Positions 22,225-59,297 of a stretch of 64,000 bases of DNA are shown one piece after another. Location of the stretch: positions 62,001-126,000 of IMG/VR virus record IMGVR_UViG_3300024336_000005; one strand, given 5' to 3'. The notes under the pieces are model-generated. The model saw only the letters and a program-made list of their open reading frames with translations. It searched no databases and was not told the DNA's origin. Within the stretch, counting starts at the first letter, position 1. The number at the start of each line of letters is the position of its first letter. Both the position numbers and the translations under genes were made by a program.

Positions 22225-22328
22225 GGACCATTAAGCTCAAGTGGTTGCAGTCGCTGTTAAGACTCAACCCAAAGGATAGAGCTTCTTCCCCAGAGGAGAG
22301 GTTGCAGGTTCGACACCTGCATGGTTCA
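22225..22328 (+). ncRNA. tRNA-like RNA with hairpin inserted in D-loop and 6-nt anticodon loop
   Basis: acceptor GGACCAT/ATGGTTC, T-arm GCAGG-TTCGACA-CCTGC, insert 22244-22268. Confidence 0.65.
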
Positions 22329-23868: not shown

Positions 23869-24487
23869 GGGGGTGTCAGGTTTCGACAGGGTATAAATAG
23901 GAAGCGATAGCAGGTCCCGCTAAGAACGGCAGCGGGTTAGAAAGCAAGTTCAAATTGTAAACGGCAACGTAAACAACATGGCGGTGGCTGCCTGATAGCT
24001 TCCCTTCGGGGAATCTATTGGTAGTGCATACCCTCTAGTCTCTGAGTTAGACCTCTTTAAGTAAGGGCTAGAGTACGTGAAATTGAGGAATCGGACAAAG
24101 AAAAGTCCAATGTCGAGTGGATGGAAACTGAAGCTTCGTAGCTGCTTGCAGATACGAGATTGGGAACGTGGTAACACGTACAAGGATAAGCCAAACTAGT
24201 TGCGGAAGACCTCCTTGATGGTTAAGAGCTACCCGCTGACAGTAAACTCATCAAAGGAAATCGTATTACTCTTTTGATGAACCTATAAGTACGAACCTCC
24301 CTGGTTGTTTCTACCATGAGGGGAGTGAGAAAACAGAGCAAGGCGCAGCTTGGGGCCGACAGGAGTTAGCCTCAAGTGGAGTGGCAAGTGCAAATCCTCT
24401 CATTTGTTTTCATCTAAATGAAACTAAACCTGTAGAAGTTGTATTTCGAAAATGTTCTGGACGGGAGTTCAATTCTCCCCACCTCCA
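23869..24487 (+). ncRNA. ssrA: tmRNA (unusually long, 619 nt)
   Basis: 5' GGGGGTGTCAGGTTTCGAC, tag ORF 23957-23995 (A)VNGNVNNMAVAA*, 3' CTAAACCTGTAG...GGACGGGAGTTCAATTCTCCCCACCTCCA. Confidence 0.9.
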
Positions 24488-24808
24488 CATTTCTTCACGC
24501 TGAGTGGCCGTGCTGATTGACGGCGGCTGAAAGCAAACGCAATAAACTACTCGCGCGCTTGGGTTAACCAACCGGAATCAAACAGGATACTGTTCGCGCG
24601 AAATCGGTTAGCCAGCCCTAATAGGTAGTGAGCGTTTGTAGAAAGTGTCTTAGACGGTATGTCAGGGAAGGTACAACCTGGACTCCGGATAGGCGTGAGG
24701 TGGTTCAGGGTTGTAGGTAAGAGAACGGAAAAGGTAATCTGAAAACGCCTTTCTGAAACCCATAAACCTAACAAAGGGGAGCCCGAGTGGTGCAAGCAGC
24801 CCCCAGAG

Positions 24809-27768: not shown

Positions 27769-27854
27769 GCTGGTGTGGTGGAATTGGTCTTCACAGGGGA
27801 CTTAAAATCCCCCGAACTTTAATGTTCTTACGGGTTCGAGTCCCGTCTCCAGTA
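27769..27854 (+). tRNA. trnL: tRNA-Leu(UAA)
   Basis: GGGGA-CTTAAAA-TCCCC, long variable arm. Confidence 0.9.
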
Positions 27855-27867
27855 CAAAGGAAGAAGA

Positions 27868-28137
27868 ATGATTCTTGAGTCACTTGAGCAAGGGGAATAC
27901 ATTCTCTTTGTTGAGATAGACGCACAACAAGCCTTTGCAGTTGAAGGATCCTACGAAGGCCCTCAGTGAGTTCCTGTTCAGGATGGGTGGATTGCAACTA
28001 TTTATGCCCGTAAAGGGGACCTAAATATTGCCATACAAGATCATCTCGAGGCTGGAAGAAAGGCCTTCTGGGTCTCCGCCGAAGACGTGAGAGTTCCACA
28101 AATGCATGTGAAGCACACCTGGAGTGGCTTGGCATAA
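27868..28137 (+). pseudogene. small ORF interrupted by one in-frame TGA at 27967
   Basis: RBS+ATG; frame continues 55 sense codons past TGA to TAA. Confidence 0.45.
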
Positions 28138-28173
28138 TATTAAGCTGGGGGTTCGAATCCTCCCACCGGCTCC
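28121..28173 (+). other. tRNA remnant lacking anticodon arm
   Basis: GGAG/CTCC ends, GCTT..AAGC hairpin, T-arm GGGGG-TTCGAAT-CCTCC. Confidence 0.35.
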
Positions 28174-28893: not shown

Positions 28894-28985
28894 CAAGAAG
28901 TAAGCGTAAATGGTACTGCTACTGGCCTAAGGTCGAAAGACCTGAATCCGGTGTGTTGGAGGTTCGAATCCTCCCTTCTTGGCCA
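28894..28985 (+). tRNA. tRNA-like (probably Gln CUG-derived) with GAAA hairpin inserted in anticodon loop
   Basis: CAAGAAG/CTTCTTG acceptor, GCCA end, AGGTC-GAAA-GACCT in loop. Confidence 0.65.
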
Positions 28986-33652: not shown

Positions 33653-34711
33653 ATGAGTGATTATCCAGATGGAACCATTATTGTAGGTCTCCAGGATGGA
33701 GACGAAAGCAAGGGAAAGGTGGCGGCGGCTCTTTGTTCGCTACCGCAAGTGACCCATTGTGTTCGCTATAGTGGTGGACAGAATGCAGGCCATGTTTTCT
33801 ACAAGGATGGCCTACAGGTTGTCACTCATATCATTCCCTCTGGGATTGTATATGGGAAGGTCTCGGTGATTGGTCCTGGCTGCGCCTTCTCTGAGAAGGG
33901 CTTCTGGGCTGAGCTAGAAGACATTTGTGATGCACTGGGGGAGACCATGTTGAATCTCTCTCGCTTGATCAAGATCTCCCCTGCTGCTCATATCGTCCAG
34001 GACAAGCACATCGTTTTGGATGAGGCGACAGACAAGATTGGATCTACCAAGAGAGGGATCGCCCCAGTCTATGCCGATAAGGCTATGAGGACGGGCATCC
34101 GAGCCGAGAGCATTCCAAGCCTAAAGCCTTTCTTGTGGGATACGACTAAGCTCAATGACCCAAAGAATGTCATCGTATTTGAAGGGGCTCAAGGCTTTGG
34201 CCTTGATCCTGATGTAGGAGATTATCCCTATATCACCAGCTCCTCCTCTCTCCCTGGTGCGATCAACAATGTTGGTGTGCCCATCTGGGCAATCAATAAG
34301 ATTGTTGGAGTTGCAAAGCTCTATGCGACCTATGTTGGGACCAAGGAATTCGAGCCAGATCTAGAGATTTTCTCAAAGCTTCGTGAGCTCGGAGGGGAGT
34401 ATGGCTCGACCACAGGCCGTCCTCGACAGTGCAACTGGTTGAATCTTGATACTCTCATCACTGCTATTCGAACCTGTGGTTGTACTACGGTCGTCTTCAG
34501 CAAGTGCGACATCATTGAACAGCTTGGCGTTTTCAAGTTGATTGATGGTGGTACAGTTCGAGAGTTCGGGAATATGGCTGGCATGATTGCTCACATTAAG
34601 CGAGAGCTTAAGGAGGAGGCACCAAGTACAAGTCTAATCTTTAGTGGCAGTCAATACACAGTTGAAGATGACTATGGCCATCTTGCTGAAGAGCCGATGG
34701 GAGAGATTTGA
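33653..34711 (+). CDS. purA: adenylosuccinate synthetase (short form)
   Basis: GDESKGK, GGQNAGH, GSTKRGI, FEGAQG, YPYITSS, EYGSTTGRPR. Confidence 0.9.
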   Translation: MSDYPDGTIIVGLQDGDESKGKVAAALCSLPQVTHCVRYSGGQNAGHVFYKDGLQVVTHIIPSGIVYGKVSVIGPGCAFSEKGFWAELEDICDALGETMLNLSRLIKISPAAHIVQDKHIVLDEATDKIGSTKRGIAPVYADKAMRTGIRAESIPSLKPFLWDTTKLNDPKNVIVFEGAQGFGLDPDVGDYPYITSSSSLPGAINNVGVPIWAINKIVGVAKLYATYVGTKEFEPDLEIFSKLRELGGEYGSTTGRPRQCNWLNLDTLITAIRTCGCTTVVFSKCDIIEQLGVFKLIDGGTVREFGNMAGMIAHIKRELKEEAPSTSLIFSGSQYTVEDDYGHLAEEPMGEI

Positions 34712-34784: not shown

Positions 34785-36146
34785 ATGTACCAAGCAATTG
34801 TTGCCAACATTCACACCCGTCCACATCCGGGAGCTGATCGAATTCAGCTAGGAACTGTATGTGGCCATCAGGTTGTATGCGGGCTTGACATTGCTGATGG
34901 TACTCTCGGTGTGTTCTTTCCTTGCGATGGCCAGCTAAGTCATGACTTCTGTGTGGCCAATGATGAGTACCCTCGGCTTGATGAACAGGGGAAGAAGGTC
35001 GGTGGCGGATTCATCAATCCTAAGAACCGTCGCGTAAAGGCACAAAGCTTTCGTGGTGAAAAGTCGGATGGCTACTGGGTTCCAATGGATAAGCTCATTA
35101 AGTGGGCAAATCATGTTTGGCGCGAGGATGACAAGGGAGACCATGTCCTCTTGTCCAACCGTGTGCAGAGCCTTGTAGAAGGTGACACCTTTGATTCCGT
35201 TGGCGATGTGCCTTTGTGTAACAAGTATGTAACTGAGAAGACCCTTAAGGCTCTTCAGAATCAGGCCAAGCAGGCTCGCAAGACTCATACTCAGTTCGCT
35301 CAGCATATTGATACCAAGCAGTTCCGATACAACATTGGAAACATCCCGGAGGGTTCCATTGTATGGATATCTGAAAAGCTTCACGGTACTAGCGGTCGCT
35401 ATGGGTACGTTCAAGCTCTTCGTGAGCTCGGTGGCCGTTTTAATGCTTTTGTTCGCAGGGCTTTTGATTGGTGCGCTGATAAGCTTGGTCTTGATGTAAG
35501 CCCTAAGTATGAACATGTTATGGGCTCACGAAGGGTTGAGCTCTCTGCTCAGTCAGAAGGGTTTTACGGCTCGATAGATTTCCGTGCAAATGTAGCAAAC
35601 AAGTTGAAGGGAAATCTCCTCAAGGGTGAGTGCATTTATGGAGAGCTAGTGGGTTGGACTGGTCCTGATTCTTTGATCATGGGCCGCCACTCAACCAAGA
35701 AGCTCGGCAAGGAGCTTCGCAAGCAGTACGGAGAAGAGGTCACCTATACTTATGGACAGCCAAACGGTTGTTCTGAGTTCTTCGTTTATCGAATCACTCG
35801 TGTTGGCCCAGATGGTCAGACGATTGAGCTCGGTGAGCGTGAGATGCGGGCAAGGGCGAGGGTCCTCGGCTTCAAGACTCCAGAGCTCTTTGCGGGGCCG
35901 ATGGTAGTTCACGACTATGCTGATGATAAGTGGGTCGATGGTGGCAAGACGCTCATGCAGGTCGTGGAAGCCTACCTAAATGGACCATCGATTGAAGACT
36001 CACGACATCCTCGAGAGGGCGTCGTGATTAGGGTTGACAGGCCTGACGGGACTACCATCTGGCTCAAGGACAAGAACCATCCGTTCAAGGTAATGGAGGG
36101 TATCGCTAAGGATTCCGGCGAAGCAGACATGGAAGAAAGCTCATGA
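34785..36146 (+). CDS. ATP-dependent RNA ligase, Rnl2/DRB0094-like with N-terminal OB fold
   Basis: HPGADRI, EKLHGTS (motif I), YGELVG, FFVYRI, REGVVIR, LKDKN. Confidence 0.85.
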   Translation: MYQAIVANIHTRPHPGADRIQLGTVCGHQVVCGLDIADGTLGVFFPCDGQLSHDFCVANDEYPRLDEQGKKVGGGFINPKNRRVKAQSFRGEKSDGYWVPMDKLIKWANHVWREDDKGDHVLLSNRVQSLVEGDTFDSVGDVPLCNKYVTEKTLKALQNQAKQARKTHTQFAQHIDTKQFRYNIGNIPEGSIVWISEKLHGTSGRYGYVQALRELGGRFNAFVRRAFDWCADKLGLDVSPKYEHVMGSRRVELSAQSEGFYGSIDFRANVANKLKGNLLKGECIYGELVGWTGPDSLIMGRHSTKKLGKELRKQYGEEVTYTYGQPNGCSEFFVYRITRVGPDGQTIELGEREMRARARVLGFKTPELFAGPMVVHDYADDKWVDGGKTLMQVVEAYLNGPSIEDSRHPREGVVIRVDRPDGTTIWLKDKNHPFKVMEGIAKDSGEADMEESS

Positions 36147-40772: not shown

Positions 40773-42416
40773 ATGAACTACGGTAAGACTGTTAGCAACG
40801 CTATCAACAATGGTCCAGTTTCTCAGCCTATCATCGGTAGGCCCGAGATGGTAAAGAACAGCACTGAGGGCTTTGTCTTCAACACCACTTCTGAGGCAGC
40901 GCTTGAGCGCTTCCTCATTCTTGGCACTGAAGGCGGCACTTACTATGCCAGCGAGAGCCGAGCTACAGTTGATGCGGCAAAGAATGTCATCGAGATGGCT
41001 GTTGCTGGCAACGTAGATGTAGTCAGTACCATCATCAAGGTCGCTACTGCTCGTCCCTCTCGTGCGCCAAAGATGGAGCCTTCCTTGTTTGCTCTTGCAG
41101 TTTGTACCGCAAAGGGCACCCCCGAGGTAAAAGCTAAGGCGCTCAGCGCGCTGAGCGCGGTTTGCCGTATCCCCACTCATCTGTTTACCTTTCTTCAGGC
41201 CCACAAGGATCTGGGAGGCAAGACCGGTGGGCGCAGCTTCCAGCGAGCCCTACAGAATTGGTATCTTGAGAAGGATCCCTCTAAGCTGGCTTATCAGGTT
41301 GTGAAGTATCAGGGGAGGAATGGCTGGACTCACCGTGATGTTCTTCGGCTTGCCCGCCCTAAGGCTCAGACCCCTGAGCAGAACTCTATTTTGAGTTGGG
41401 CTGTGAATGGTTCGCTGCCTCTGGCAGTAAGTTCTGAAGCGGGTGCTTATCTTGTGGCGGCGAATGAGCTGCTGCGAGGGGAGCCGACGAAGCAGCGTGC
41501 AATCAACTTGATTGAGTCTCATGGGTTCACCCATGAGATGGTTCCGACTAAGCTTCAGAAGGACCCTGATATCTGGGCAGCTTTGCTTCCCCGCATGCCT
41601 ATCAATGCAATGGTTCGCAACCTTGGTCGGATGACTGCCAATGGTCTGATTGTTCCATTCAGTGCCACAACTCAGAGCGTGGTGGAGAAGCTTGAGAATG
41701 TGGATGCCCTTCGCAAGAGCCGCATCCATCCGCTCAACGTTTACGTGGCCTTGCGTACCTATCAGCAGGGCAAGGGCACTCGAGGTTCGTTGACTTGGCG
41801 TCCTGATGCTCAGATCTTGAGCGCACTAGAAGGAGCATTCTACAATGCTTTCGGGAATGTAGAACCGACTGGTAAGCGCTTCATGGTGGGCCTGGATGTA
41901 AGCGGCAGCATGGGTGGATTCTATGGCTACGGCTATAACAGTACTGTGAACCAGACTGGCCTTATGGGGATTCCTGGGTTTACGCCTTATGAGGCAGAAA
42001 CCCTTATGTCCCTTTTGGTTGCAAAGACTGAGAAGCAGACCTTCTTTGGTGGGTTTTCAGACAACTTCACTCCCCTTGCTATCAACTCCCGTGATAACAT
42101 GAGCTCGGCTCTTCAGAAGATCCGATCACTCCGCATGGGTTCCACTAGGATTGCTGCTCCGATGGAGTATGCCACCAAGAACAGGATTCCGGTGGATTGC
42201 TTCCAGATCTACACCGACAATGAAGTGAACATGGGCGGACATCCTTGTCAGACCCTTGAGAAGTATCGTCAGGCTACTGGCATCAATGCGGCCATGGTCG
42301 TATGCGCTATGACCTCTACGAATTTCACTGTGGCCGACCCGAAGGATCCGAAGCAGCTTGATGTTGTTGGATTTGACACGGCAGTGCCAGCTTTGATTCG
42401 ACAGCTTTTGGTGTAA
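40773..42416 (+). CDS. rsr: Ro60/Rsr TROVE-domain RNA-binding protein
   Basis: LERFLILGTEGGTYY, KYQGRNGWTHRDVLRLARP, VRNLGRMT, IHP, vWA MIDAS DVSGSM, YTDNE, DVVGFD. Confidence 0.97.
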   Translation: MNYGKTVSNAINNGPVSQPIIGRPEMVKNSTEGFVFNTTSEAALERFLILGTEGGTYYASESRATVDAAKNVIEMAVAGNVDVVSTIIKVATARPSRAPKMEPSLFALAVCTAKGTPEVKAKALSALSAVCRIPTHLFTFLQAHKDLGGKTGGRSFQRALQNWYLEKDPSKLAYQVVKYQGRNGWTHRDVLRLARPKAQTPEQNSILSWAVNGSLPLAVSSEAGAYLVAANELLRGEPTKQRAINLIESHGFTHEMVPTKLQKDPDIWAALLPRMPINAMVRNLGRMTANGLIVPFSATTQSVVEKLENVDALRKSRIHPLNVYVALRTYQQGKGTRGSLTWRPDAQILSALEGAFYNAFGNVEPTGKRFMVGLDVSGSMGGFYGYGYNSTVNQTGLMGIPGFTPYEAETLMSLLVAKTEKQTFFGGFSDNFTPLAINSRDNMSSALQKIRSLRMGSTRIAAPMEYATKNRIPVDCFQIYTDNEVNMGGHPCQTLEKYRQATGINAAMVVCAMTSTNFTVADPKDPKQLDVVGFDTAVPALIRQLLV

Positions 42417-46125: not shown

Positions 46126-46165
46126 ACGGCAGTGGTGTAATGGTAGCACGAGGGATTCCAAACCT
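46126..46165 (+). pseudogene. 5' half of split tRNA-Trp(CCA)
   Basis: ACGGCAG..AGGGA-TTCCAAA-CC; pairs 7/7 with CTGCCGT at 46849-46855. Confidence 0.85.
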
Positions 46166-46172
46166 GTTGCAT

Positions 46173-46244
46173 ACGCCCTTAGCCAAATGGTAAGGCAGCG
46201 GATTCCAAACCCGTGATTTGTAGGTTCGATCCCTACAGGGCGTG
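46173..46244 (+). tRNA. trnW: tRNA-Trp(CCA), intact copy inside the split gene
   Basis: ACGCCCT/AGGGCGT, GCGGA-TTCCAAA-CCCGT, G73. Confidence 0.93.
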
Positions 46245-46246
46245 CA

Positions 46247-46795
46247 TTATTTAAAGGGGCCATCTTGATTTAGATAGTGATCAACTTGATGACAGGTAGG
46301 ACAAAGAATTTCTAAGTTCTCAATAGAACTATCAAGCTTATCTCTATTTTTATGATGAACCTGTAATACATTTGGATACTCACTCCATCCACATTGTGCA
46401 CAAACAAGTTTAAGTTGCTCAAAAGCAATGGCCCTGTATCCACCTTTTATATATCTACCATTTTTGTAGTTGCTTCCTTTGGAGCCTGATCTAAAAAAGG
46501 TGTTAGCACAGCTTCTGCTACAAACAGTCTTTTCTTTTGGATGTCCTTTAAGAGTCTCAAATTCCTTTAGGCATTGTGGGCATTCTTTTAATACTGTCTG
46601 ATACTTCCTTCTAGGATTTTTCCAATGAGAAATATCTAAAGCCTCTTTTGAAATTCTTGAACGCAGAGCCTGATAAGGCGCATTGTCTATTCCAAGAATT
46701 TCAAATAATTCCTTTCCGCAGGAAGCTGTTTCTACTGCTGCAGCGAAAGATTTAGTCGAATATAACCAGATTCTTGATTTCTTTTTGTGGTTCAT
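46247..46795 (-). CDS. HNH homing endonuclease (antisense, AT-rich)
   Basis: CPQC..CSRSC Zn finger; CAQCG..LQVHHKNRDK..NLEILCPTCH. Confidence 0.9.
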   Translation of the reverse strand: MNHKKKSRIWLYSTKSFAAAVETASCGKELFEILGIDNAPYQALRSRISKEALDISHWKNPRRKYQTVLKECPQCLKEFETLKGHPKEKTVCSRSCANTFFRSGSKGSNYKNGRYIKGGYRAIAFEQLKLVCAQCGWSEYPNVLQVHHKNRDKLDSSIENLEILCPTCHQVDHYLNQDGPFK

Positions 46796-46827
46796 GCATA
46801 CCTCCTAAGGACACAATAACAAAGATT

Positions 46828-46856
46828 CGGTCAGGGTTCAAGTCCTTGCTGCCGTG
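46828..46856 (+). pseudogene. 3' half of split tRNA-Trp
   Basis: CAGGG-TTCAAGT-CCTTG T-arm, CTGCCGT-G acceptor strand. Confidence 0.85.
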
Positions 46857-46878
46857 CAAAATGAAAGAAGAAAACAAC

Positions 46879-47312: not shown

Positions 47313-47318
47313 AGATTT

Positions 47319-47493
47319 ATTGAACTGAAGAGATCTAGGTTATCACTATAAAGGCTCGGCCCTCTTAACAGAGGTTTGCAGGTTCGAATCCTGTCGATCC
47401 GAAAGGATCGTGGCGAAATGGTAAACGCACCGAATATAAGTACCGGGGACCTTGAAAGAGGAATCCAATCTCCTAACTCGTCCCTTGTTCAAT
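47319..47493 (+). ncRNA. putative Y RNA 4, YrlA-type with permuted tRNA domain
   Basis: ATTGAACTGA/TTGTTCAAT; T-arm GCAGG-TTCGAAT-CCTGT, CGATCC-GAAA-GGATCG, D-arm GCG-AAATGGTAAA-CGC. Confidence 0.85.
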
Positions 47494-47498
47494 GATTT

Positions 47499-47584: not shown

Positions 47585-47737
47585 GAAAGTCTGGTAGCAG
47601 TTCAGGATGTTTCCCTTAAGGCTCCTGGAGTGGGTGCAACTCCTATACTTTCATTAGAGGAGCTTATAGCCTGCAGGCTTGTAAGAGCGACAGTGTGGCC
47701 ACACTGTGATAGGGTTTGAGTCCCTGTGCCTCTGCCA
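47585..47737 (+). other. two degenerate tRNA-like elements (about 47585-47651 and 47656-47737)
   Basis: acceptor-like ends and T-like arms (GTGGG-TGCAACT-CCTAT; TAGGG-TTTGAGT-CCCTG, GCCA) but no canonical anticodon arm. Confidence 0.4.
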
Positions 47738-47740
47738 CAA

Positions 47741-47774
47741 TCGGAAGTAGTCTAATTGGCAAAACAGGGGCCTC
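47741..47774 (+). pseudogene. 5' half of a split tRNA (identity uncertain, possibly Gln)
   Basis: TCGGAAG-TA-GTCTAATTGGC; pairs 7/7 with CTTCCGA at 48652-48658. Confidence 0.8.
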
Positions 47775-47777
47775 GTG

Positions 47778-48488
47778 CTACTTGAGCCATTTGCGAATAG
47801 CATTATCAGTAACTCCGTAATGTCTTCCTGTTTTAGAATATCCCCATAGCTTTATTTGATCCAATAGAACTTCCTTGGAGGGTCTATTCAAAACCTTACG
47901 TCTTGAGTGGTCTGCCTGCCTTGCACAAGATCTACACCTAGCGGCTGTTGCTGAAATTTTTTCTTGACAGTCTTGACAATGATTTTGCTTCTTTTTGTGC
48001 GAAACATTTCGTCCAGCAAAGGTGGCCGTCTGGCTATTGCAATTAGGACAAAGAAAGCGCAAATTCTCTAATCTATGATCATTATTAATTCCATTGATGT
48101 GATCAAGAATTAATACAAGTAATTCTTCATTCCAAATATTGTTTTGCTTGCACAAGAGGCATTCATAAGGAATTACGCCCTCTTTTAGGATGCGTTGCTT
48201 AAGAGTGCCACGGCTGTAGGATGAATTCTTAATCATGTATTCCTCAAGGGGCTTGCCTCTTGAGGATGAAACCAGCCTTCTTGCTTCATTGTTTGTAAGA
48301 TCAATCCTAATTAATTCTTCTTGTAGGCAATATTTAATTGCTAATTCCTTTAGGATTCTGTATGTAGACCCACAGCGATTGGCAATGTTTAGGATCTCTA
48401 AAGCCTGGGCTCTCGATTCTGCTTGTTGTATTGCAGAAATAAATTCTATTTTGGGGACTTTATACAGGGGATGACTTTTCTTTCTCAT
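47778..48488 (-). CDS. HNH homing endonuclease (antisense, AT-rich)
   Basis: LILDHINGINNDHRLENLRFLCPNCNSQ; start set at MRKKSH with AGGAG RBS. Confidence 0.9.
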   Translation of the reverse strand: MRKKSHPLYKVPKIEFISAIQQAESRAQALEILNIANRCGSTYRILKELAIKYCLQEELIRIDLTNNEARRLVSSSRGKPLEEYMIKNSSYSRGTLKQRILKEGVIPYECLLCKQNNIWNEELLVLILDHINGINNDHRLENLRFLCPNCNSQTATFAGRNVSHKKKQNHCQDCQEKISATAARCRSCARQADHSRRKVLNRPSKEVLLDQIKLWGYSKTGRHYGVTDNAIRKWLK

Positions 48489-48500
48489 GATACTCCTTGA

Positions 48501-48583
48501 TCGGGGGTGATGAAACTGGCATATATGCTCGACTCTGAATCGAGTGCTTCGGCGTGAGGGTTCGAATCCCTCCTCCCGATCCA
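48501..48583 (+). tRNA. tRNA with CUG (Gln) anticodon on a class II (Leu/Ser-like) body
   Basis: CTCGA-CTCTGAA-TCGAG, variable arm TGCTTCGGCGT, U73, CCA. Confidence 0.85.
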
Positions 48584-48596
48584 ATGCATATTTGTT

Positions 48597-48625
48597 ATTA
48601 TATGGCAAAGTACAAATAATAGCAA
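48597..48625 (-). promoter_or_regulatory. sigma70-type promoter for antisense HNH
   Basis: TTGCTA-17bp-TATAAT on minus strand. Confidence 0.7.
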
Positions 48626-48630
48626 TATAT

Positions 48631-48662
48631 GTTTGCAGGTTCAAGTCCTGCCTTCCGAACCA
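48631..48662 (+). pseudogene. 3' half of split tRNA
   Basis: GCAGG-TTCAAGT-CCTGC, CTTCCGA-A-CCA. Confidence 0.8.
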
Positions 48663-49985: not shown

Positions 49986-50189
49986 ATGAGTGGTAAGATA
50001 ACTAAGAGTGCATATGTTCAGCTAATAAAAGAAAATATTGCATGGTTAAAGACCATGCCTAGGACCCTAGAGCGAAACCATATTATGCTTATAGTTGAAA
50101 AGTCTATTGACTTTTACTACCCCACTTCCCATCCCCATTTTGAAAGTGTTCAACCTCATGGCAAGTTGGGCACAGGATCTTTAGATTAG
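49986..50189 (+). CDS. small hypothetical protein (3' end overlaps HNH tail)
   Basis: AGGAGG RBS. Confidence 0.7.
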   Translation: MSGKITKSAYVQLIKENIAWLKTMPRTLERNHIMLIVEKSIDFYYPTSHPHFESVQPHGKLGTGSLD

Positions 50190-50628
50190 ATAAAGAACTA
50201 TTTGCTCTGTCACGATCTTTATGGTGGACATGAAGAACCTCTGGCACTTGGTTGAAGCCACATTCAGAGCACTGATGGGGCAAATGCTTGAAAGCTAACT
50301 TGCGATACTCTACTCCTCCCTTCCAAGAGCCATGATTTTCATTGCTTCGGAAATGGGTATTAGAACATCCGTAAGAGCAGGTTGTTGTTTCTTTTGGGTG
50401 TCCCTTTAGTGTTTCAAATTCTTTTGAGCATACAGGGCATTCCTTAGTTACCTTAAGATATTTTCTTCTATCTCTAGAGCTTTTGTACCTATCGAAATGA
50501 GAGGTGTCAAAAGGCTCGCAATCTTTTTTAGCCTTTCTTGTTCCAGATCCATTTAATGGATATCCGATATATCTACAAATATCTGAATAAGAATTGAAGG
50601 TACTGATAAGGTTTTGTGTAAGTTTCAT
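50104..50628 (-). CDS. HNH homing endonuclease, paralog of 46247-46795
   Basis: shared KEFETLKGHPKE..CS and HH.(N/D)RD...NL.ILCPTCH. Confidence 0.9.
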   Translation of the reverse strand: MKLTQNLISTFNSYSDICRYIGYPLNGSGTRKAKKDCEPFDTSHFDRYKSSRDRRKYLKVTKECPVCSKEFETLKGHPKETTTCSYGCSNTHFRSNENHGSWKGGVEYRKLAFKHLPHQCSECGFNQVPEVLHVHHKDRDRANSSLSNLKILCPTCHEVEHFQNGDGKWGSKSQ

Positions 50629-50640
50629 TTTTTCTCCTAT

Positions 50641-50719
50641 CTGCGCGTAGCTCAGTCTGGTTTAGAGTAACCGCCTTGGAAGCGGTAAGTCGTTGGTTCA
50701 AATCCAACCGTGCAGACCA
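50641..50719 (+). tRNA. trnP: tRNA-Pro(UGG)
   Basis: ACCGC-CTTGGAA-GCGGT, ACCA. Confidence 0.93.
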
Positions 50720-50737
50720 AAATATTCAATATTCCTT

Positions 50738-50765
50738 ATTATAACACAGACTTTTGTCTTGTCAA
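50738..50765 (-). promoter_or_regulatory. consensus sigma70 promoter for antisense HNH
   Basis: TTGACA-16bp-TATAAT with TG extended -10 on minus strand. Confidence 0.8.
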
Positions 50766-50780
50766 TAAGATTTGAATTAA

Positions 50781-50868
50781 CTAGCGAGCGGGCGGTGGAC
50801 GCCCAACCGTGCTGTACAGCGGTGGTGCTTTGATGCACAACTGGGTTCGATTCCTAGGCGCTAGACCA
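50781..50868 (+). tRNA. Tyr-like class II tRNA with 8-nt anticodon loop
   Basis: ACCGT-GCTGTACA-GCGGT, GTGC..GCAC arm, 5-bp D stem, ACCA. Confidence 0.65.
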
Positions 50869-52038: not shown

Positions 52039-52121
52039 GTGCCCTTTGGCGGAATGGTAGACGCACGTAATGGTCCCCTCCGGCTTAGAGGGGTGCAGGT
52101 TCGACTCCTGTAAGGGTGCCA
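52039..52121 (+). ncRNA. tRNA-like RNA lacking a normal anticodon arm
   Basis: acceptor, Leu-type D arm and T arm present; only CGTAATGGT then CCCCTC-CGGCTTA-GAGGGG. Confidence 0.6.
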
Positions 52122-54378: not shown

Positions 54379-54598
54379 GAGGACAATCTAAGATTTAATC
54401 TTAGACTAAACGTCACTGACATCTAGGTTCGAATCCTAGGCCCGCAACCATGTGCCTGCGCGATGCATCATAAGCAGCTCTTCAATGGGGGAGTGGTGGG
54501 TGAAAGTCCCATGGCACAACATAATGCGGGTTGGCGAAACTGGTATACGCGGGGACTTGTCCCTGTCAGACATGACACTTAAGCTTAAGCTATTCCTC
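54379..54598 (+). ncRNA. circularly permuted tRNA-like RNA on a long stem
   Basis: T-arm + GCCCGCA-ACCA precede TGCGGGT + D-arm; closed by CTGACA/TGTCAG and GAGGA/TCCTC. Confidence 0.8.
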
Positions 54599-59164: not shown

Positions 59165-59297
59165 TCTGGTGTCGCTTAATGGTAGAGCAGGCGGCTGTGG
59201 TTTATTGCAAGGGCATTACAAGGGTCTTAACCTTGGTAGGCCTCATAACCGCCCGGGGGAAACTCCATTGTAGGTTCGACTCCTACCACCAGAGCCA
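59165..59297 (+). tRNA. interrupted tRNA (Asn-like) with 47-nt insert in anticodon loop and long variable arm
   Basis: TCTGGTG/CACCAGA, G73, CCA; GGCGG-CTGT[59199-59245]TAA-CCGCC. Confidence 0.75.

What the first reader, a model, noticed from the sequence alone, without database searches (positions are those of the whole stretch)
47741..48662. Second split tRNA with an HNH + cargo tRNA + promoter cassette inside
Seen: 5' half TCGGAAG.. (47741-47774), antisense HNH, intact CUG-anticodon tRNA (48501-48583), minus-strand TTGCTA-17-TATAAT, then the 3' half ending CTTCCGA-A-CCA (7/7 pairing). The break falls after ..GGGGC CT C, compatible with, but not proving, an original CUG anticodon. This is an independent repeat of the Trp design with an unrelated HNH and the cargo on the other side.
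Basis: partly seen in the sequence, partly recalled or inferred. Interest (0 to 1): 0.82.

Follow-up and report, generated by a model that had tools for sequence, protein, structure and literature searches.

The report
Homing nuclease cassette splitting a tRNA gene
A selfish nuclease gene that carries its own glutamine tRNA has landed inside, and destroyed, what was almost certainly the phage's resident copy of that same tRNA gene, a natural cut-and-replace arrangement that recurs with other tRNAs in this and another phage.

Summary
At 47741-47774 lies the first 34 nt of a tRNA. At 48632-48662 lie its variable-loop end, T arm, 3' acceptor strand (7/7 Watson-Crick), A73 and CCA. The 860 nt between them hold an intact 236-aa HNH endonuclease on the minus strand, a tRNA-Gln(CUG) on the plus strand, and sigma-70-like hexamers on the minus strand. 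No ribozyme is present and about 10-13 nt are missing, including the 3' strand of the anticodon stem. The halves are therefore a dead scar, not a spliceable gene.

The broken gene was very probably also tRNA-Gln(CUG). It has U1-A72, and only the two Gln tRNAs of the window share that. Its exact 18-nt D arm occurs in public phage and bacterial tRNAs only in tRNA-Gln(CUG).

The design recurs. The neighbouring Trp case joins precisely into tRNA-Trp(CCA). An unrelated metagenome contig holds split tRNA-Pro(UGG) + antisense HNH + cargo tRNA-Pro(UGG).

The nuclease belongs to the F-TflIV/hegA group of phage tRNA arrays. Homing by nucleases in tRNA clusters is known (SegB, T5). The nested same-isotype replacement is a new variant. 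Cleavage, mobility and cargo immunity are inferred. No empty-site allele exists in the collections.

The parts
47741..47774 (+). 5' remnant of the disrupted tRNA (positions 1-34: acceptor strand, D arm, 5' strand of the anticodon stem, C32 U33 C34); probably a former tRNA-Gln(CUG)
   Evidence: Sequence. 7/7 Watson-Crick pairing with 48652-48658 plus a canonical D arm. D arm identical to tRNA-Gln(CUG) genes elsewhere.
47778..48488 (-). HNH (His-Me finger) endonuclease gene, 236 aa, of the F-TflIV/hegA-like group; the stop codon lies 3 nt from the 5' remnant
   Evidence: ORF and translation. phrog_10822 E 7e-36. Catalytic D129-H130, N142, N149 and the four zinc cysteines are invariant in alignment A1. 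Annotated relatives are named H-N-H endonuclease F-TflIV. GC 0.387 against 0.505 for the window.
48493..48498 (-). Shine-Dalgarno AAGGAG of the HNH gene, in the 12-nt spacer between the HNH start codon and the cargo tRNA
   Evidence: Read from the sequence.
48501..48583 (+). Cargo tRNA-Gln(CUG), 83 nt including CCA, U1-A72, 13-nt variable arm; it lies antisense within the presumed 5' UTR of the HNH transcript
   Evidence: ARAGORN. Rfam tRNA 43.4 bits. Fold.
48597..48644 (-). Two overlapping sigma-70-like promoter candidates for the HNH gene: TTGCTA-17-TATAAT (48625-48597) and TTGAAC-17-TATTAT (48644-48616). The -35 of the second is the antisense of the remnant's T loop.
   Evidence: Consensus scan; not enriched over shuffles. 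The same order (promoter, antisense tRNA, SD, HNH) is seen in the window's Pro cassette and in L130 and L131.
48632..48662 (+). 3' remnant of the disrupted tRNA: TTT of the variable loop, T arm GCAGG/TTCAAGT/CCTGC, acceptor strand CTTCCGA, A73, CCA
   Evidence: Sequence. Orphan T arm. Rfam 5'-truncated tRNA, 17.3 bits.
46126..46866 (+). Sister case: tRNA-Trp(CCA) split between positions 48 and 49 by cargo tRNA-Trp(CCA) (46173-46245) plus an antisense HNH (46247-46795)
   Evidence: Sequence. The joined fragments give a 73-nt tRNA-Trp(cca). HNH Pfam PF01844.
50104..50765 (-). Third cassette with the same internal order: promoter TTGACA-16-TATAAT (50765-50738), antisense tRNA-Pro(UGG) (50641-50719), HNH (50628-50104). 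No flanking tRNA halves here.
   Evidence: HNH-tRNA-Pro linkage is conserved in L130, L131, L134 and L136, and the cassette is nested in a split tRNA-Pro in L128.

Best explanation
The locus is the scar of a homing-endonuclease cassette that landed inside a tRNA gene. The cassette is a compact minus-strand unit of about 860 nt. It holds a promoter, then a tRNA-Gln(CUG) gene lying antisense in the 5' UTR, then a ribosome-binding site, then the HNH gene. It interrupts a resident tRNA gene, very probably also tRNA-Gln(CUG), in the anticodon loop. About 10-13 nt (U35 to the start of the variable loop) were lost. The two flanking pieces are therefore non-functional remnants.

Proposed mechanism, by analogy with SegB of T4 and the F-Tfl enzymes of T5. 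In a mixed infection the HNH enzyme cuts the cassette-free tRNA-Gln gene of a related phage. Repair copies the nuclease gene together with its tightly linked tRNA from the donor. Where flanking homology is poor, the ends are joined illegitimately and the broken target stays as two halves. The cargo tRNA differs from the target in anticodon stem, 13-nt variable arm and T loop (TTCGAAT against TTCAAGT). It would resist cutting and restore decoding of CAG, so the invasion costs the phage little.

Shown: the anatomy, the intactness of the HNH, the absence of any intron core, the probable shared identity of target and cargo, and the recurrence of the design.

Inferred: cleavage, its site, homing, the immunity of the cargo, and promoter use.
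For: - Anatomy and one-gene origin of the halves.
- HNH intact and of a family resident in tRNA arrays. Of 44 distinct full-length relatives, 32 have a tRNA within 120 nt, and most of the rest sit in intron-like insertions in tRNA genes or in tRNA arrays. Annotated relatives are named F-TflIV/hegA.
- Foreign origin: the three HNH ORFs are among the lowest-GC stretches of the window (0.36-0.39 against 0.505 +/- 0.065).
- Identity of the target.
- Recurrence with verified same isotype and anticodon: Trp in the window, Pro in L128.
- The HNH-tRNA-Pro(UGG) unit persists across 39-66% HNH identity in five further contigs. The tRNA starts 8-12 nt from the HNH start in four of them and 78 nt in the fifth. 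A promoter-like site lies beyond the tRNA in three loci (window, L130, L131).
- No ribozyme: Rfam finds nothing. ARAGORN in intron mode finds nothing. The anticodon-stem 3' strand is missing.
- Precedent: SegB recognises the T-arm motif of tRNA genes, cuts the tRNA-Asn gene of T2L and co-converts neighbouring tRNA genes (PMC2330249). SegB breaks followed by microhomology recombination rearrange tRNA loci (PMC13096335).
Against: - No cassette-free allele was found. The phage has no close relative in IMG/VR, JGI metagenomes, GenBank phages or GTDB genomes. The three loci fetched from other samples are identical in sequence.
- Anticodon bases 35-36 of the target are gone. Among phage tRNAs with U1 and C34, CAU tRNAs are nearly as common as Gln(CUG) (7 against 9).
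- On the tree of the F-TflIV-like relatives the neighbouring tRNA isotype is not clustered (28 changes against 29.8 in shuffles). That lineage as a whole is therefore not tied to tRNA-Gln.
- Promoter-like sites are not enriched.
- No terminal repeats or target-site duplication mark the cassette ends.
- No biochemical data exist for this protein, and no solved relative was found by sequence.
Confidence: 0.7

Rival explanations
1. Passive scar. An illegitimate recombination or deletion event placed a nuclease gene and a neighbouring tRNA between the two parts of a tRNA gene. The nuclease did not cause the break, and there is no selection for replacement.
For: - No cleavage data exist.
- No isotype clustering in the F-TflIV-like tree.
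- Phage tRNA arrays are recombination hot spots, and this window is full of tRNA fragments.
Against: Target and cargo share isotype and anticodon in the two cases where this can be read (Trp, Pro), and probably in this one. With about 25 isotypes in the array this is unlikely without a causal link. The cassettes are minimal: nuclease, tRNA and promoter, with only a few bases to spare.
Confidence: 0.17
2. Functional interrupted gene. The 860 nt are an intron (group I or other), or the halves are joined in trans, as in archaeal split tRNAs, to give a working tRNA.
For: Relatives of this HNH do sit inside intron-like insertions in the anticodon loop of tRNA genes (L062, L066, L070, L075, L079). 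These carry group-I-like core elements. The break here is also in the anticodon loop.
Against: - No RNA family hit in the insert, and no room for a ribozyme between ORF, tRNA and flanks.
- The nuclease is antisense.
- The 3' strand of the anticodon stem and the rest of the anticodon are absent, so joining the flanks cannot give a cloverleaf (the ARAGORN joins invent spurious anticodon arms).
- No complementary leader or trailer sequences.
Confidence: 0.03
3. The remnants are kept because they now serve the nuclease gene. For example, the antisense T loop (TTCAAGT read as TTGAAC) would act as the -35 element of its promoter. This is compatible with the main explanation and concerns retention only.
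For: Both window remnants (Trp 46832, Gln 48635) have the T loop TTCAAGT, which only one other tRNA in the window shares. In both, a TATTNT hexamer lies 17 nt downstream on the minus strand.
Against: The L128 remnant has TTCGAAT and no convincing hexamers. A better candidate, TTGCTA-17-TATAAT, lies wholly inside the cassette. The shared T loop could equally be part of the nuclease recognition site.
Confidence: 0.1
4. The two pieces come from two different tRNA genes, or they are attachment-site duplications left by an integrase-type element.
For: tRNA 3' fragments commonly flank integrated elements in bacteria (PMC9897764, listed).
Against: 7/7 Watson-Crick acceptor complementarity plus a matching architecture. 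No integrase is present. The 5' piece is not completed by an element-borne 3' copy, which is what integrase-type insertion produces.
Confidence: 0.02

Closest known systems
F-TflIV / hegA-type HNH endonucleases of the T5 tRNA gene region (Akulenko et al. 2004, as cited in PMC2330249 and PMC10644984)
   Same: Homologous protein: 28% identity over 94% of the length to the copy in T5-like Salmonella phage EH7, and 40% over the full length to the copy in Enterococcus phage Bop. Both are annotated H-N-H endonuclease F-TflIV. Both are free-standing ORFs between tRNA genes.
   Different: Those genes lie in the same orientation as the tRNAs and between intact tRNA genes. Here the gene is antisense, holds a tRNA in its own leader, and the unit sits inside a broken tRNA gene.
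SegB of phage T4 (GIY-YIG homing endonuclease in the tRNA cluster; PMC2330249)
   Same: A free-standing nuclease in a tRNA array that cuts tRNA genes of nuclease-free relatives (recognising the T-arm motif GGTTCRANTCC) and drags neighbouring tRNA genes along. This is the proposed working principle here. Both 3' remnants in the window begin at the variable loop/T-arm border.
   Different: A different nuclease fold (GIY-YIG, not HNH). Repair there is homologous and leaves no split target. No same-isotype nested cargo is described.
Intron-borne HNH endonucleases in tRNA genes (bacterial group I introns in tRNA anticodon loops; relatives L062, L066, L070, L075, L079 found here)
   Same: The same HNH superfamily clade inserted in the anticodon loop of U1-type tRNA genes.
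   Different: Those insertions are sense-oriented, keep both exons complete and carry group-I-like core elements. The window's insertion has no ribozyme, has lost part of the gene, and brings a replacement tRNA instead of splicing.
Synthetic cleave-and-rescue gene-drive elements (comparison from my own knowledge, not tested here)
   Same: The logic of a nuclease that destroys a gene while being linked to an uncuttable copy of it.
   Different: These are engineered systems in eukaryotes that target essential genes. Here the target is an accessory phage tRNA, and drive has not been shown.

Membership tests
HNH (His-Me finger) endonuclease | beta-beta-alpha-metal motif with the catalytic His, Asn residues and two CxxC zinc pairs | tested here: met
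   D129-H130, N132, N142, N149, C110/C113 and C147/C150 are invariant in alignment A1. phrog_10822 E 7e-36. Pfam HNH itself does not reach E 0.01 for this protein, although homologues carry PF01844/PF13392.
Free-standing homing endonuclease of phage tRNA arrays (F-TflIV/hegA-like) | Sequence homology to named members and a location between tRNA genes | tested here: met
   tblastn hits annotated F-TflIV. Relatives lie almost always in tRNA arrays.
Free-standing homing endonuclease of phage tRNA arrays (F-TflIV/hegA-like) | Sporadic presence or absence among otherwise collinear close relatives | not testable with these tools
   No close relative of this phage is in any collection. The three loci fetched from other samples are identical in sequence.
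Free-standing homing endonuclease of phage tRNA arrays (F-TflIV/hegA-like) | Site-specific cleavage of the nuclease-free allele and unidirectional gene conversion | not testable with these tools
   Requires an enzyme assay and mixed infections.
Group I intron with an internal homing endonuclease gene | Ribozyme core (P3-P9), complete exons, ORF usually in sense | tested here: not met
   No Rfam hit at E up to 10 in the insert or in the whole window. The ORF is antisense. The exon sequence is incomplete.
Split or permuted tRNA genes that are reassembled at the RNA level | Both halves together contain every tRNA position, plus complementary flanks for joining | tested here: not met
   Positions 35 to about 44-47 are missing, and no complementary flanks exist.
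tRNA-Gln(CUG) (identity of the disrupted gene) | U1-A72 and Gln-type acceptor and D arm | tested here: met
   U1 occurs only in the two Gln tRNAs of the window, and in 29 of 33 Gln tRNAs of the comparison set. The exact D-arm 18-mer occurs in tRNAs only in Gln(CUG).
tRNA-Gln(CUG) (identity of the disrupted gene) | Anticodon C34 U35 G36 | tested here: inconclusive
   C34 is present; positions 35-36 are deleted. Among U1 + C34 phage tRNAs, 9 are Gln(CUG) and 7 are CAU.
Integrase-type element inserted in a tRNA gene | Integrase gene and a duplicated tRNA 3' segment that restores the gene | tested here: not met
   No integrase ORF, and the gene is not restored.

The most novel reading that the evidence does not exclude
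A class of natural cut-and-replace selfish elements in phage tRNA arrays. A nuclease gene carries a cleavage-resistant copy of the very tRNA gene it destroys, nested on the opposite strand of its own leader. It can then invade even without flanking homology and at little cost. At least two distant HNH lineages would have arrived at this design independently: the F-TflIV-like lineage with Gln, and the Trp/Pro lineage. Oddities of phage tRNAs, such as the 13-nt variable arm of this tRNA-Gln, could then be immunity mutations against such nucleases.
Probability: 0.4. Interest if true: 0.75.

Novelty: new variant of a known kind. Interest (0 to 1): 0.6.

Why it matters
Homing endonucleases are already held to shuffle phage tRNA arrays. 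What has been missing is a view of an invasion caught in the act. Here the broken target, the nuclease and the replacement tRNA lie side by side. The same pattern appears three times with three isotypes and two nuclease lineages.

If the enzyme cuts the intact gene and spares the cargo, several things follow:
- It would explain how tRNA genes are exchanged between unrelated phages without homology.
- It would explain why some nuclease-tRNA pairs stay linked over long divergence.
- It might explain why phage tRNAs carry odd structural variants.
- It would supply a small natural nuclease with a defined tRNA-gene target, and a natural parallel to engineered cleave-and-rescue drives.

If the enzyme does not cut, the locus is an ordinary recombination scar.

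Tried and rejected
1. Empty-site alleles. I ran exact and degenerate DNA patterns of both halves and of the cargo against IMG/VR. I used the adjacent 76-aa ORF against IMG/VR and JGI metagenomes, a conserved DUF7873 gene 5 kb away, and blastn against GenBank phages. Only the source contig or very distant phages came back.

2. Population variation. The three loci fetched from other samples are base-for-base identical over 6-8.7 kb.

3. Isotype assignment by overall similarity of the 5' half to 479 phage tRNAs was uninformative; Met, Trp, Arg and Gln were mixed. A looser D-arm pattern gave Gln 3, Asn 4, Tyr 1 and Trp 1. Only the exact 18-mer is specific to Gln(CUG).

4. Hypothesis that F-TflIV-like HNH subclades track particular tRNA isotypes: rejected (28 changes against 29.8 in shuffles). 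The linkage does hold in the separate Pro lineage.

5. Intron hypothesis: rejected. Rfam also failed to flag the intron-like relatives, so their group I nature rests on my reading of core-like elements.

6. The Rfam truncated-hit test of the 5' half alone gave nothing.

7. Transposon-like termini or target duplications: none convincing.

8. T loop as -35 element: holds for two of three cases only.

9. Solved-structure relatives by sequence: none.

10. L129, a relative of the Trp-type HNH next to tRNA-Ala, showed no clear flanking halves.

Full report
SOURCE AND SETTING

The window is part of a phage genome of about 204 kb (IMGVR_UViG_3300024336_000005 = Ga0233449_1000031). The three loci fetched from other samples are identical in sequence, among at least 24 contigs that carry the identical nuclease protein. 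The window carries 26 ARAGORN tRNAs. It also carries a tmRNA, an RNA ligase, a Ro60/TROVE protein and a short adenylosuccinate-synthetase homologue. It has no close relative in GenBank phages, IMG/VR or JGI metagenomes.

THE OBSERVATION

- The 5' piece (47741-47774) is 34 nt: TCGGAAG, U8 A9, a D arm GTCT/AATTGGCA/AAAC, A26, GGGGC, and the loop bases C U C.
- Three bases later the stop codon of a minus-strand ORF begins (47778-48488, 236 aa).
- Twelve bases beyond its ATG, a spacer that contains AAGGAG, the plus-strand tRNA-Gln(CUG) begins (48501-48583; Rfam 43.4 bits).
- After 48 more bases, which hold two overlapping sigma-70-like hexamer pairs on the minus strand, come TTT, a perfect T arm, CTTCCGA, A and CCA (48632-48662).

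The acceptor strands pair 7/7. When I joined every plus-strand position of the window to the 3' piece, only six loci of 63,966 positions gave any tRNA call. Only 47741 combines perfect pairing with a canonical D arm. The 3' piece alone scores 17.3 bits as a truncated tRNA. The halves therefore come from one gene.

First, the 3' strand of the anticodon stem is nowhere to be found, so roughly positions 35 to 44-47 were lost. Second, the promoter hexamers are good matches, but the region has no more such matches than shuffled sequence.

WHAT THE INSERT IS

The ORF is a complete HNH nuclease.

- It matches PHROG phrog_10822 end to end (E 7e-36).
- It aligns over its full length with its nearest homologues, two of which end with the same residues RKWLK.
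- It keeps the catalytic Asp-His, the Asn residues and both CxxC pairs (alignment A1).
- Behind the nuclease core lie a second zinc ribbon and a helix-turn-helix-like tail.

Annotated relatives in cultured phages are called hegA / H-N-H endonuclease F-TflIV and lie between tRNA genes. Examples are Salmonella phage EH7, a T5 relative, and Enterococcus phage Bop. Across 79 IMG/VR loci, and further contigs from the protein collection, relatives sit almost without exception in tRNA arrays.

The three HNH ORFs of the window are among its lowest-GC stretches (0.36-0.39 against 0.505), as expected for imported genes.

The insert has no RNA-family match and no room for a ribozyme. With part of the gene missing, splicing or trans-joining cannot rebuild a tRNA. 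The halves are a scar.

IDENTITY OF THE BROKEN GENE

Three independent lines now point to tRNA-Gln(CUG).

(a) Of the 26 tRNAs in the window, only two start with U. Both are Gln and both start TCG, as does the remnant. In 479 phage tRNAs, U1 occurs in 29 of 33 Gln tRNAs and is otherwise common only in Asn and Ile, whose anticodons do not begin with C.

(b) The exact 18-nt string from U8 to C25 occurs in IMG/VR in one tRNA other than the source, a tRNA-Gln(CUG) (L088). In one genome per species of 185,579 bacterial and archaeal species it occurs in three tRNAs, all tRNA-Gln(CUG) with U1-A72 (L119, L120, L122).

(c) Those genes have the variable loop ATTT, and two of them have A73. The window keeps TTT before the T arm and has A73.

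The residual doubt is that U1 + C34 also fits CAU tRNAs (7 against 9 in my set), and that a looser D-arm pattern is shared with Asn, Tyr and Trp. I put Gln(CUG) at about 0.8.

RECURRENCE OF THE DESIGN

The neighbouring Trp locus is clean. Fragments 46126-46172 and 46832-46858 join without loss or gain into a 73-nt tRNA-Trp(CCA). Between them lie a different tRNA-Trp(CCA) and an antisense HNH. That HNH is a distant homologue of the Gln one (27% identity, E 9e-7), not an unrelated protein.

A third HNH (50104-50628) is 52% identical to the Trp one. It shows the same internal order as the Gln cassette: a perfect TTGACA-16-TATAAT, an antisense tRNA-Pro(UGG), a ribosome-binding site, and the HNH. 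It has no flanking halves.

Searching its relatives gave two results.

- In L130, L131-133, L134/135 and L136 the HNH is 46-66% identical. In each, an antisense tRNA-Pro(UGG) sits just before the HNH start. The gap is 8-11 nt in the first three groups and 78 nt in L136. A promoter-like site lies beyond the tRNA in L130 and L131.
- In L128, a 1.4-kb contig from another sample, the same kind of unit lies between a 5' fragment of tRNA-Pro(UGG) with a complete anticodon arm and a 3' fragment with a 7/7 matching acceptor strand, A and CCA. The fragments join into tRNA-Pro(UGG) for every junction tried.

Target and cargo therefore share isotype and anticodon in both cases where this can be read directly. 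With some 25 isotypes available, that is not a coincidence.

MECHANISM

The best explanation is ordinary homing biology with an unusual outcome. SegB of T4 recognises the T-arm motif of tRNA genes, cuts the tRNA-Asn gene of T2L, and transfers itself with the neighbouring tRNA genes (PMC2330249). SegB breaks resolved through microhomology also rearrange tRNA loci (PMC13096335). T5 carries HNH enzymes of the present family in its tRNA region.

I propose the following. The window's enzyme cuts a cassette-free tRNA-Gln(CUG) gene. The break is repaired from a donor that carries the nuclease tightly linked to a resistant tRNA-Gln(CUG). Because the two phages share little flanking homology, the donor segment is joined in illegitimately. 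After some resection this leaves the two target halves. The losses were about 10-13 nt here, none at Trp, and part of the T stem in L128.

The cargo differs from the target in anticodon stem, variable arm (13 nt against about 4) and T loop. This is what an immune allele would look like.

Placing the tRNA inside the nuclease's own leader on the other strand makes the pair inseparable by recombination. The antisense orientation against the tRNA operon may keep nuclease expression low, as has been argued for SegB through tRNA processing. All steps from cutting onward are inferred.

WHAT DID NOT WORK OUT

- The F-TflIV-like lineage as a whole shows no clustering of neighbouring isotype on its tree, so it is not a 'Gln nuclease' family.
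- Nested cases are rare among its 79 sampled loci. L028 has a sense-oriented HNH inside a tRNA with no cargo. A separate clade (L062, L066, L070, L075, L078, L079) lies in intron-like insertions in the anticodon loop.
- The cassette has no terminal repeats.
- The idea that the remnant's T loop supplies the -35 element fits the two window cases but not L128.

VERDICT

It is a new variant of a known kind, namely homing endonucleases that remodel phage tRNA arrays. It is not a new category. Its interest lies in showing target, nuclease and same-isotype replacement together, repeatedly, and in making the cut-and-replace idea directly testable.

Noticed in passing
window 47318-47498: A circularly permuted tRNA-like module: variable-arm-like hairpin, T arm (47378-47394), an acceptor-like stem CGATCC/GGATCG closed by GAAA, then a D arm, with the outer ends pairing (centroid fold). 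This is the layout described for bacterial YrlA-type Y RNAs (PMC4201824). A Ro60/TROVE gene lies at 40773-42416. Rfam gave no hit.
   Followed up: partly
window 54380-54560: A second '3' part before 5' part' arrangement. An anticodon-like hairpin has the loop AT TTA AT, followed by a long variable region, a T arm at 54423 and GCCCGCA-A-CCA. About 100 nt downstream lies a matching 5' strand TGCGGGT with a D arm. It could be another Y-RNA-like RNA or tRNA debris.
   Followed up: no
window 23869-24490: Phage-encoded tmRNA (Rfam RF00023, 83.5 bits).
   Followed up: no
window 33653-34711 and 34785-36146: A short (352 aa) adenylosuccinate-synthetase homologue (PF00709, E 2e-68), of the size seen in PurZ enzymes of phages with 2-aminoadenine DNA (that comparison is from my own knowledge). 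Next to it lies an RNA ligase (PF09414).
   Followed up: no
window 50781-50868: A tRNA-like gene with an 8-nt anticodon loop (ARAGORN reports the four-base anticodon tgta) and G rather than U at position 8. It lies directly after the Pro cassette.
   Followed up: no
window 59165-59294; 22225-22327; 52040-52119; 28894-28982: Further tRNA-like genes that ARAGORN misses. One has an insertion of about 55 nt (Rfam 42 bits). The others are weak or oddly built.
   Followed up: no
window 27769-28170: An orphan T arm at 28147 is followed by CACCGGC. This strand pairs 7/7 with the 5' strand of tRNA-Leu(UAA) at 27769, better than that tRNA's own 3' strand does (6/7). About 290 nt lie between them. This may be another replaced 3' half.
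   Followed up: no
L062 2948-4015, L066, L070, L075, L079: A well-supported clade of HNH relatives lies inside insertions of about 1 kb in the anticodon loop of tRNA genes, several of which begin with U1. When the flanks are joined after CT CT and before AA, the anticodon reads CUA (an amber suppressor). The 3' parts carry group-I-like core elements, but Rfam reports no intron.
   Followed up: partly
L028 2676-3600: A sense-oriented HNH relative sits inside a tRNA gene (anticodon loop CT GGT) with only about 85 and 25 nt of non-coding insert. That is too little for a ribozyme, and there is no cargo tRNA.
   Followed up: partly
L130, L131-L136, window 50104-50765: An HNH plus antisense tRNA-Pro(UGG) unit is conserved across 46-66% protein identity, while the tRNA sequences themselves differ widely. 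The gap between tRNA and HNH start is 8-12 nt in most loci and 78 nt in L136.
   Followed up: partly
L018, L035, L011, L105 and window 48501-48583: tRNA-Gln genes with long variable arms (83-88 nt in total) recur in phage tRNA arrays that also hold these HNH genes.
   Followed up: no
window 47650-47738: Just upstream of the 5' remnant lies a stretch with a T-arm-like hairpin (AGGG/TTTGAGT/CCCT) and partly complementary ends. No tool calls it. It may be another decayed tRNA.
   Followed up: no
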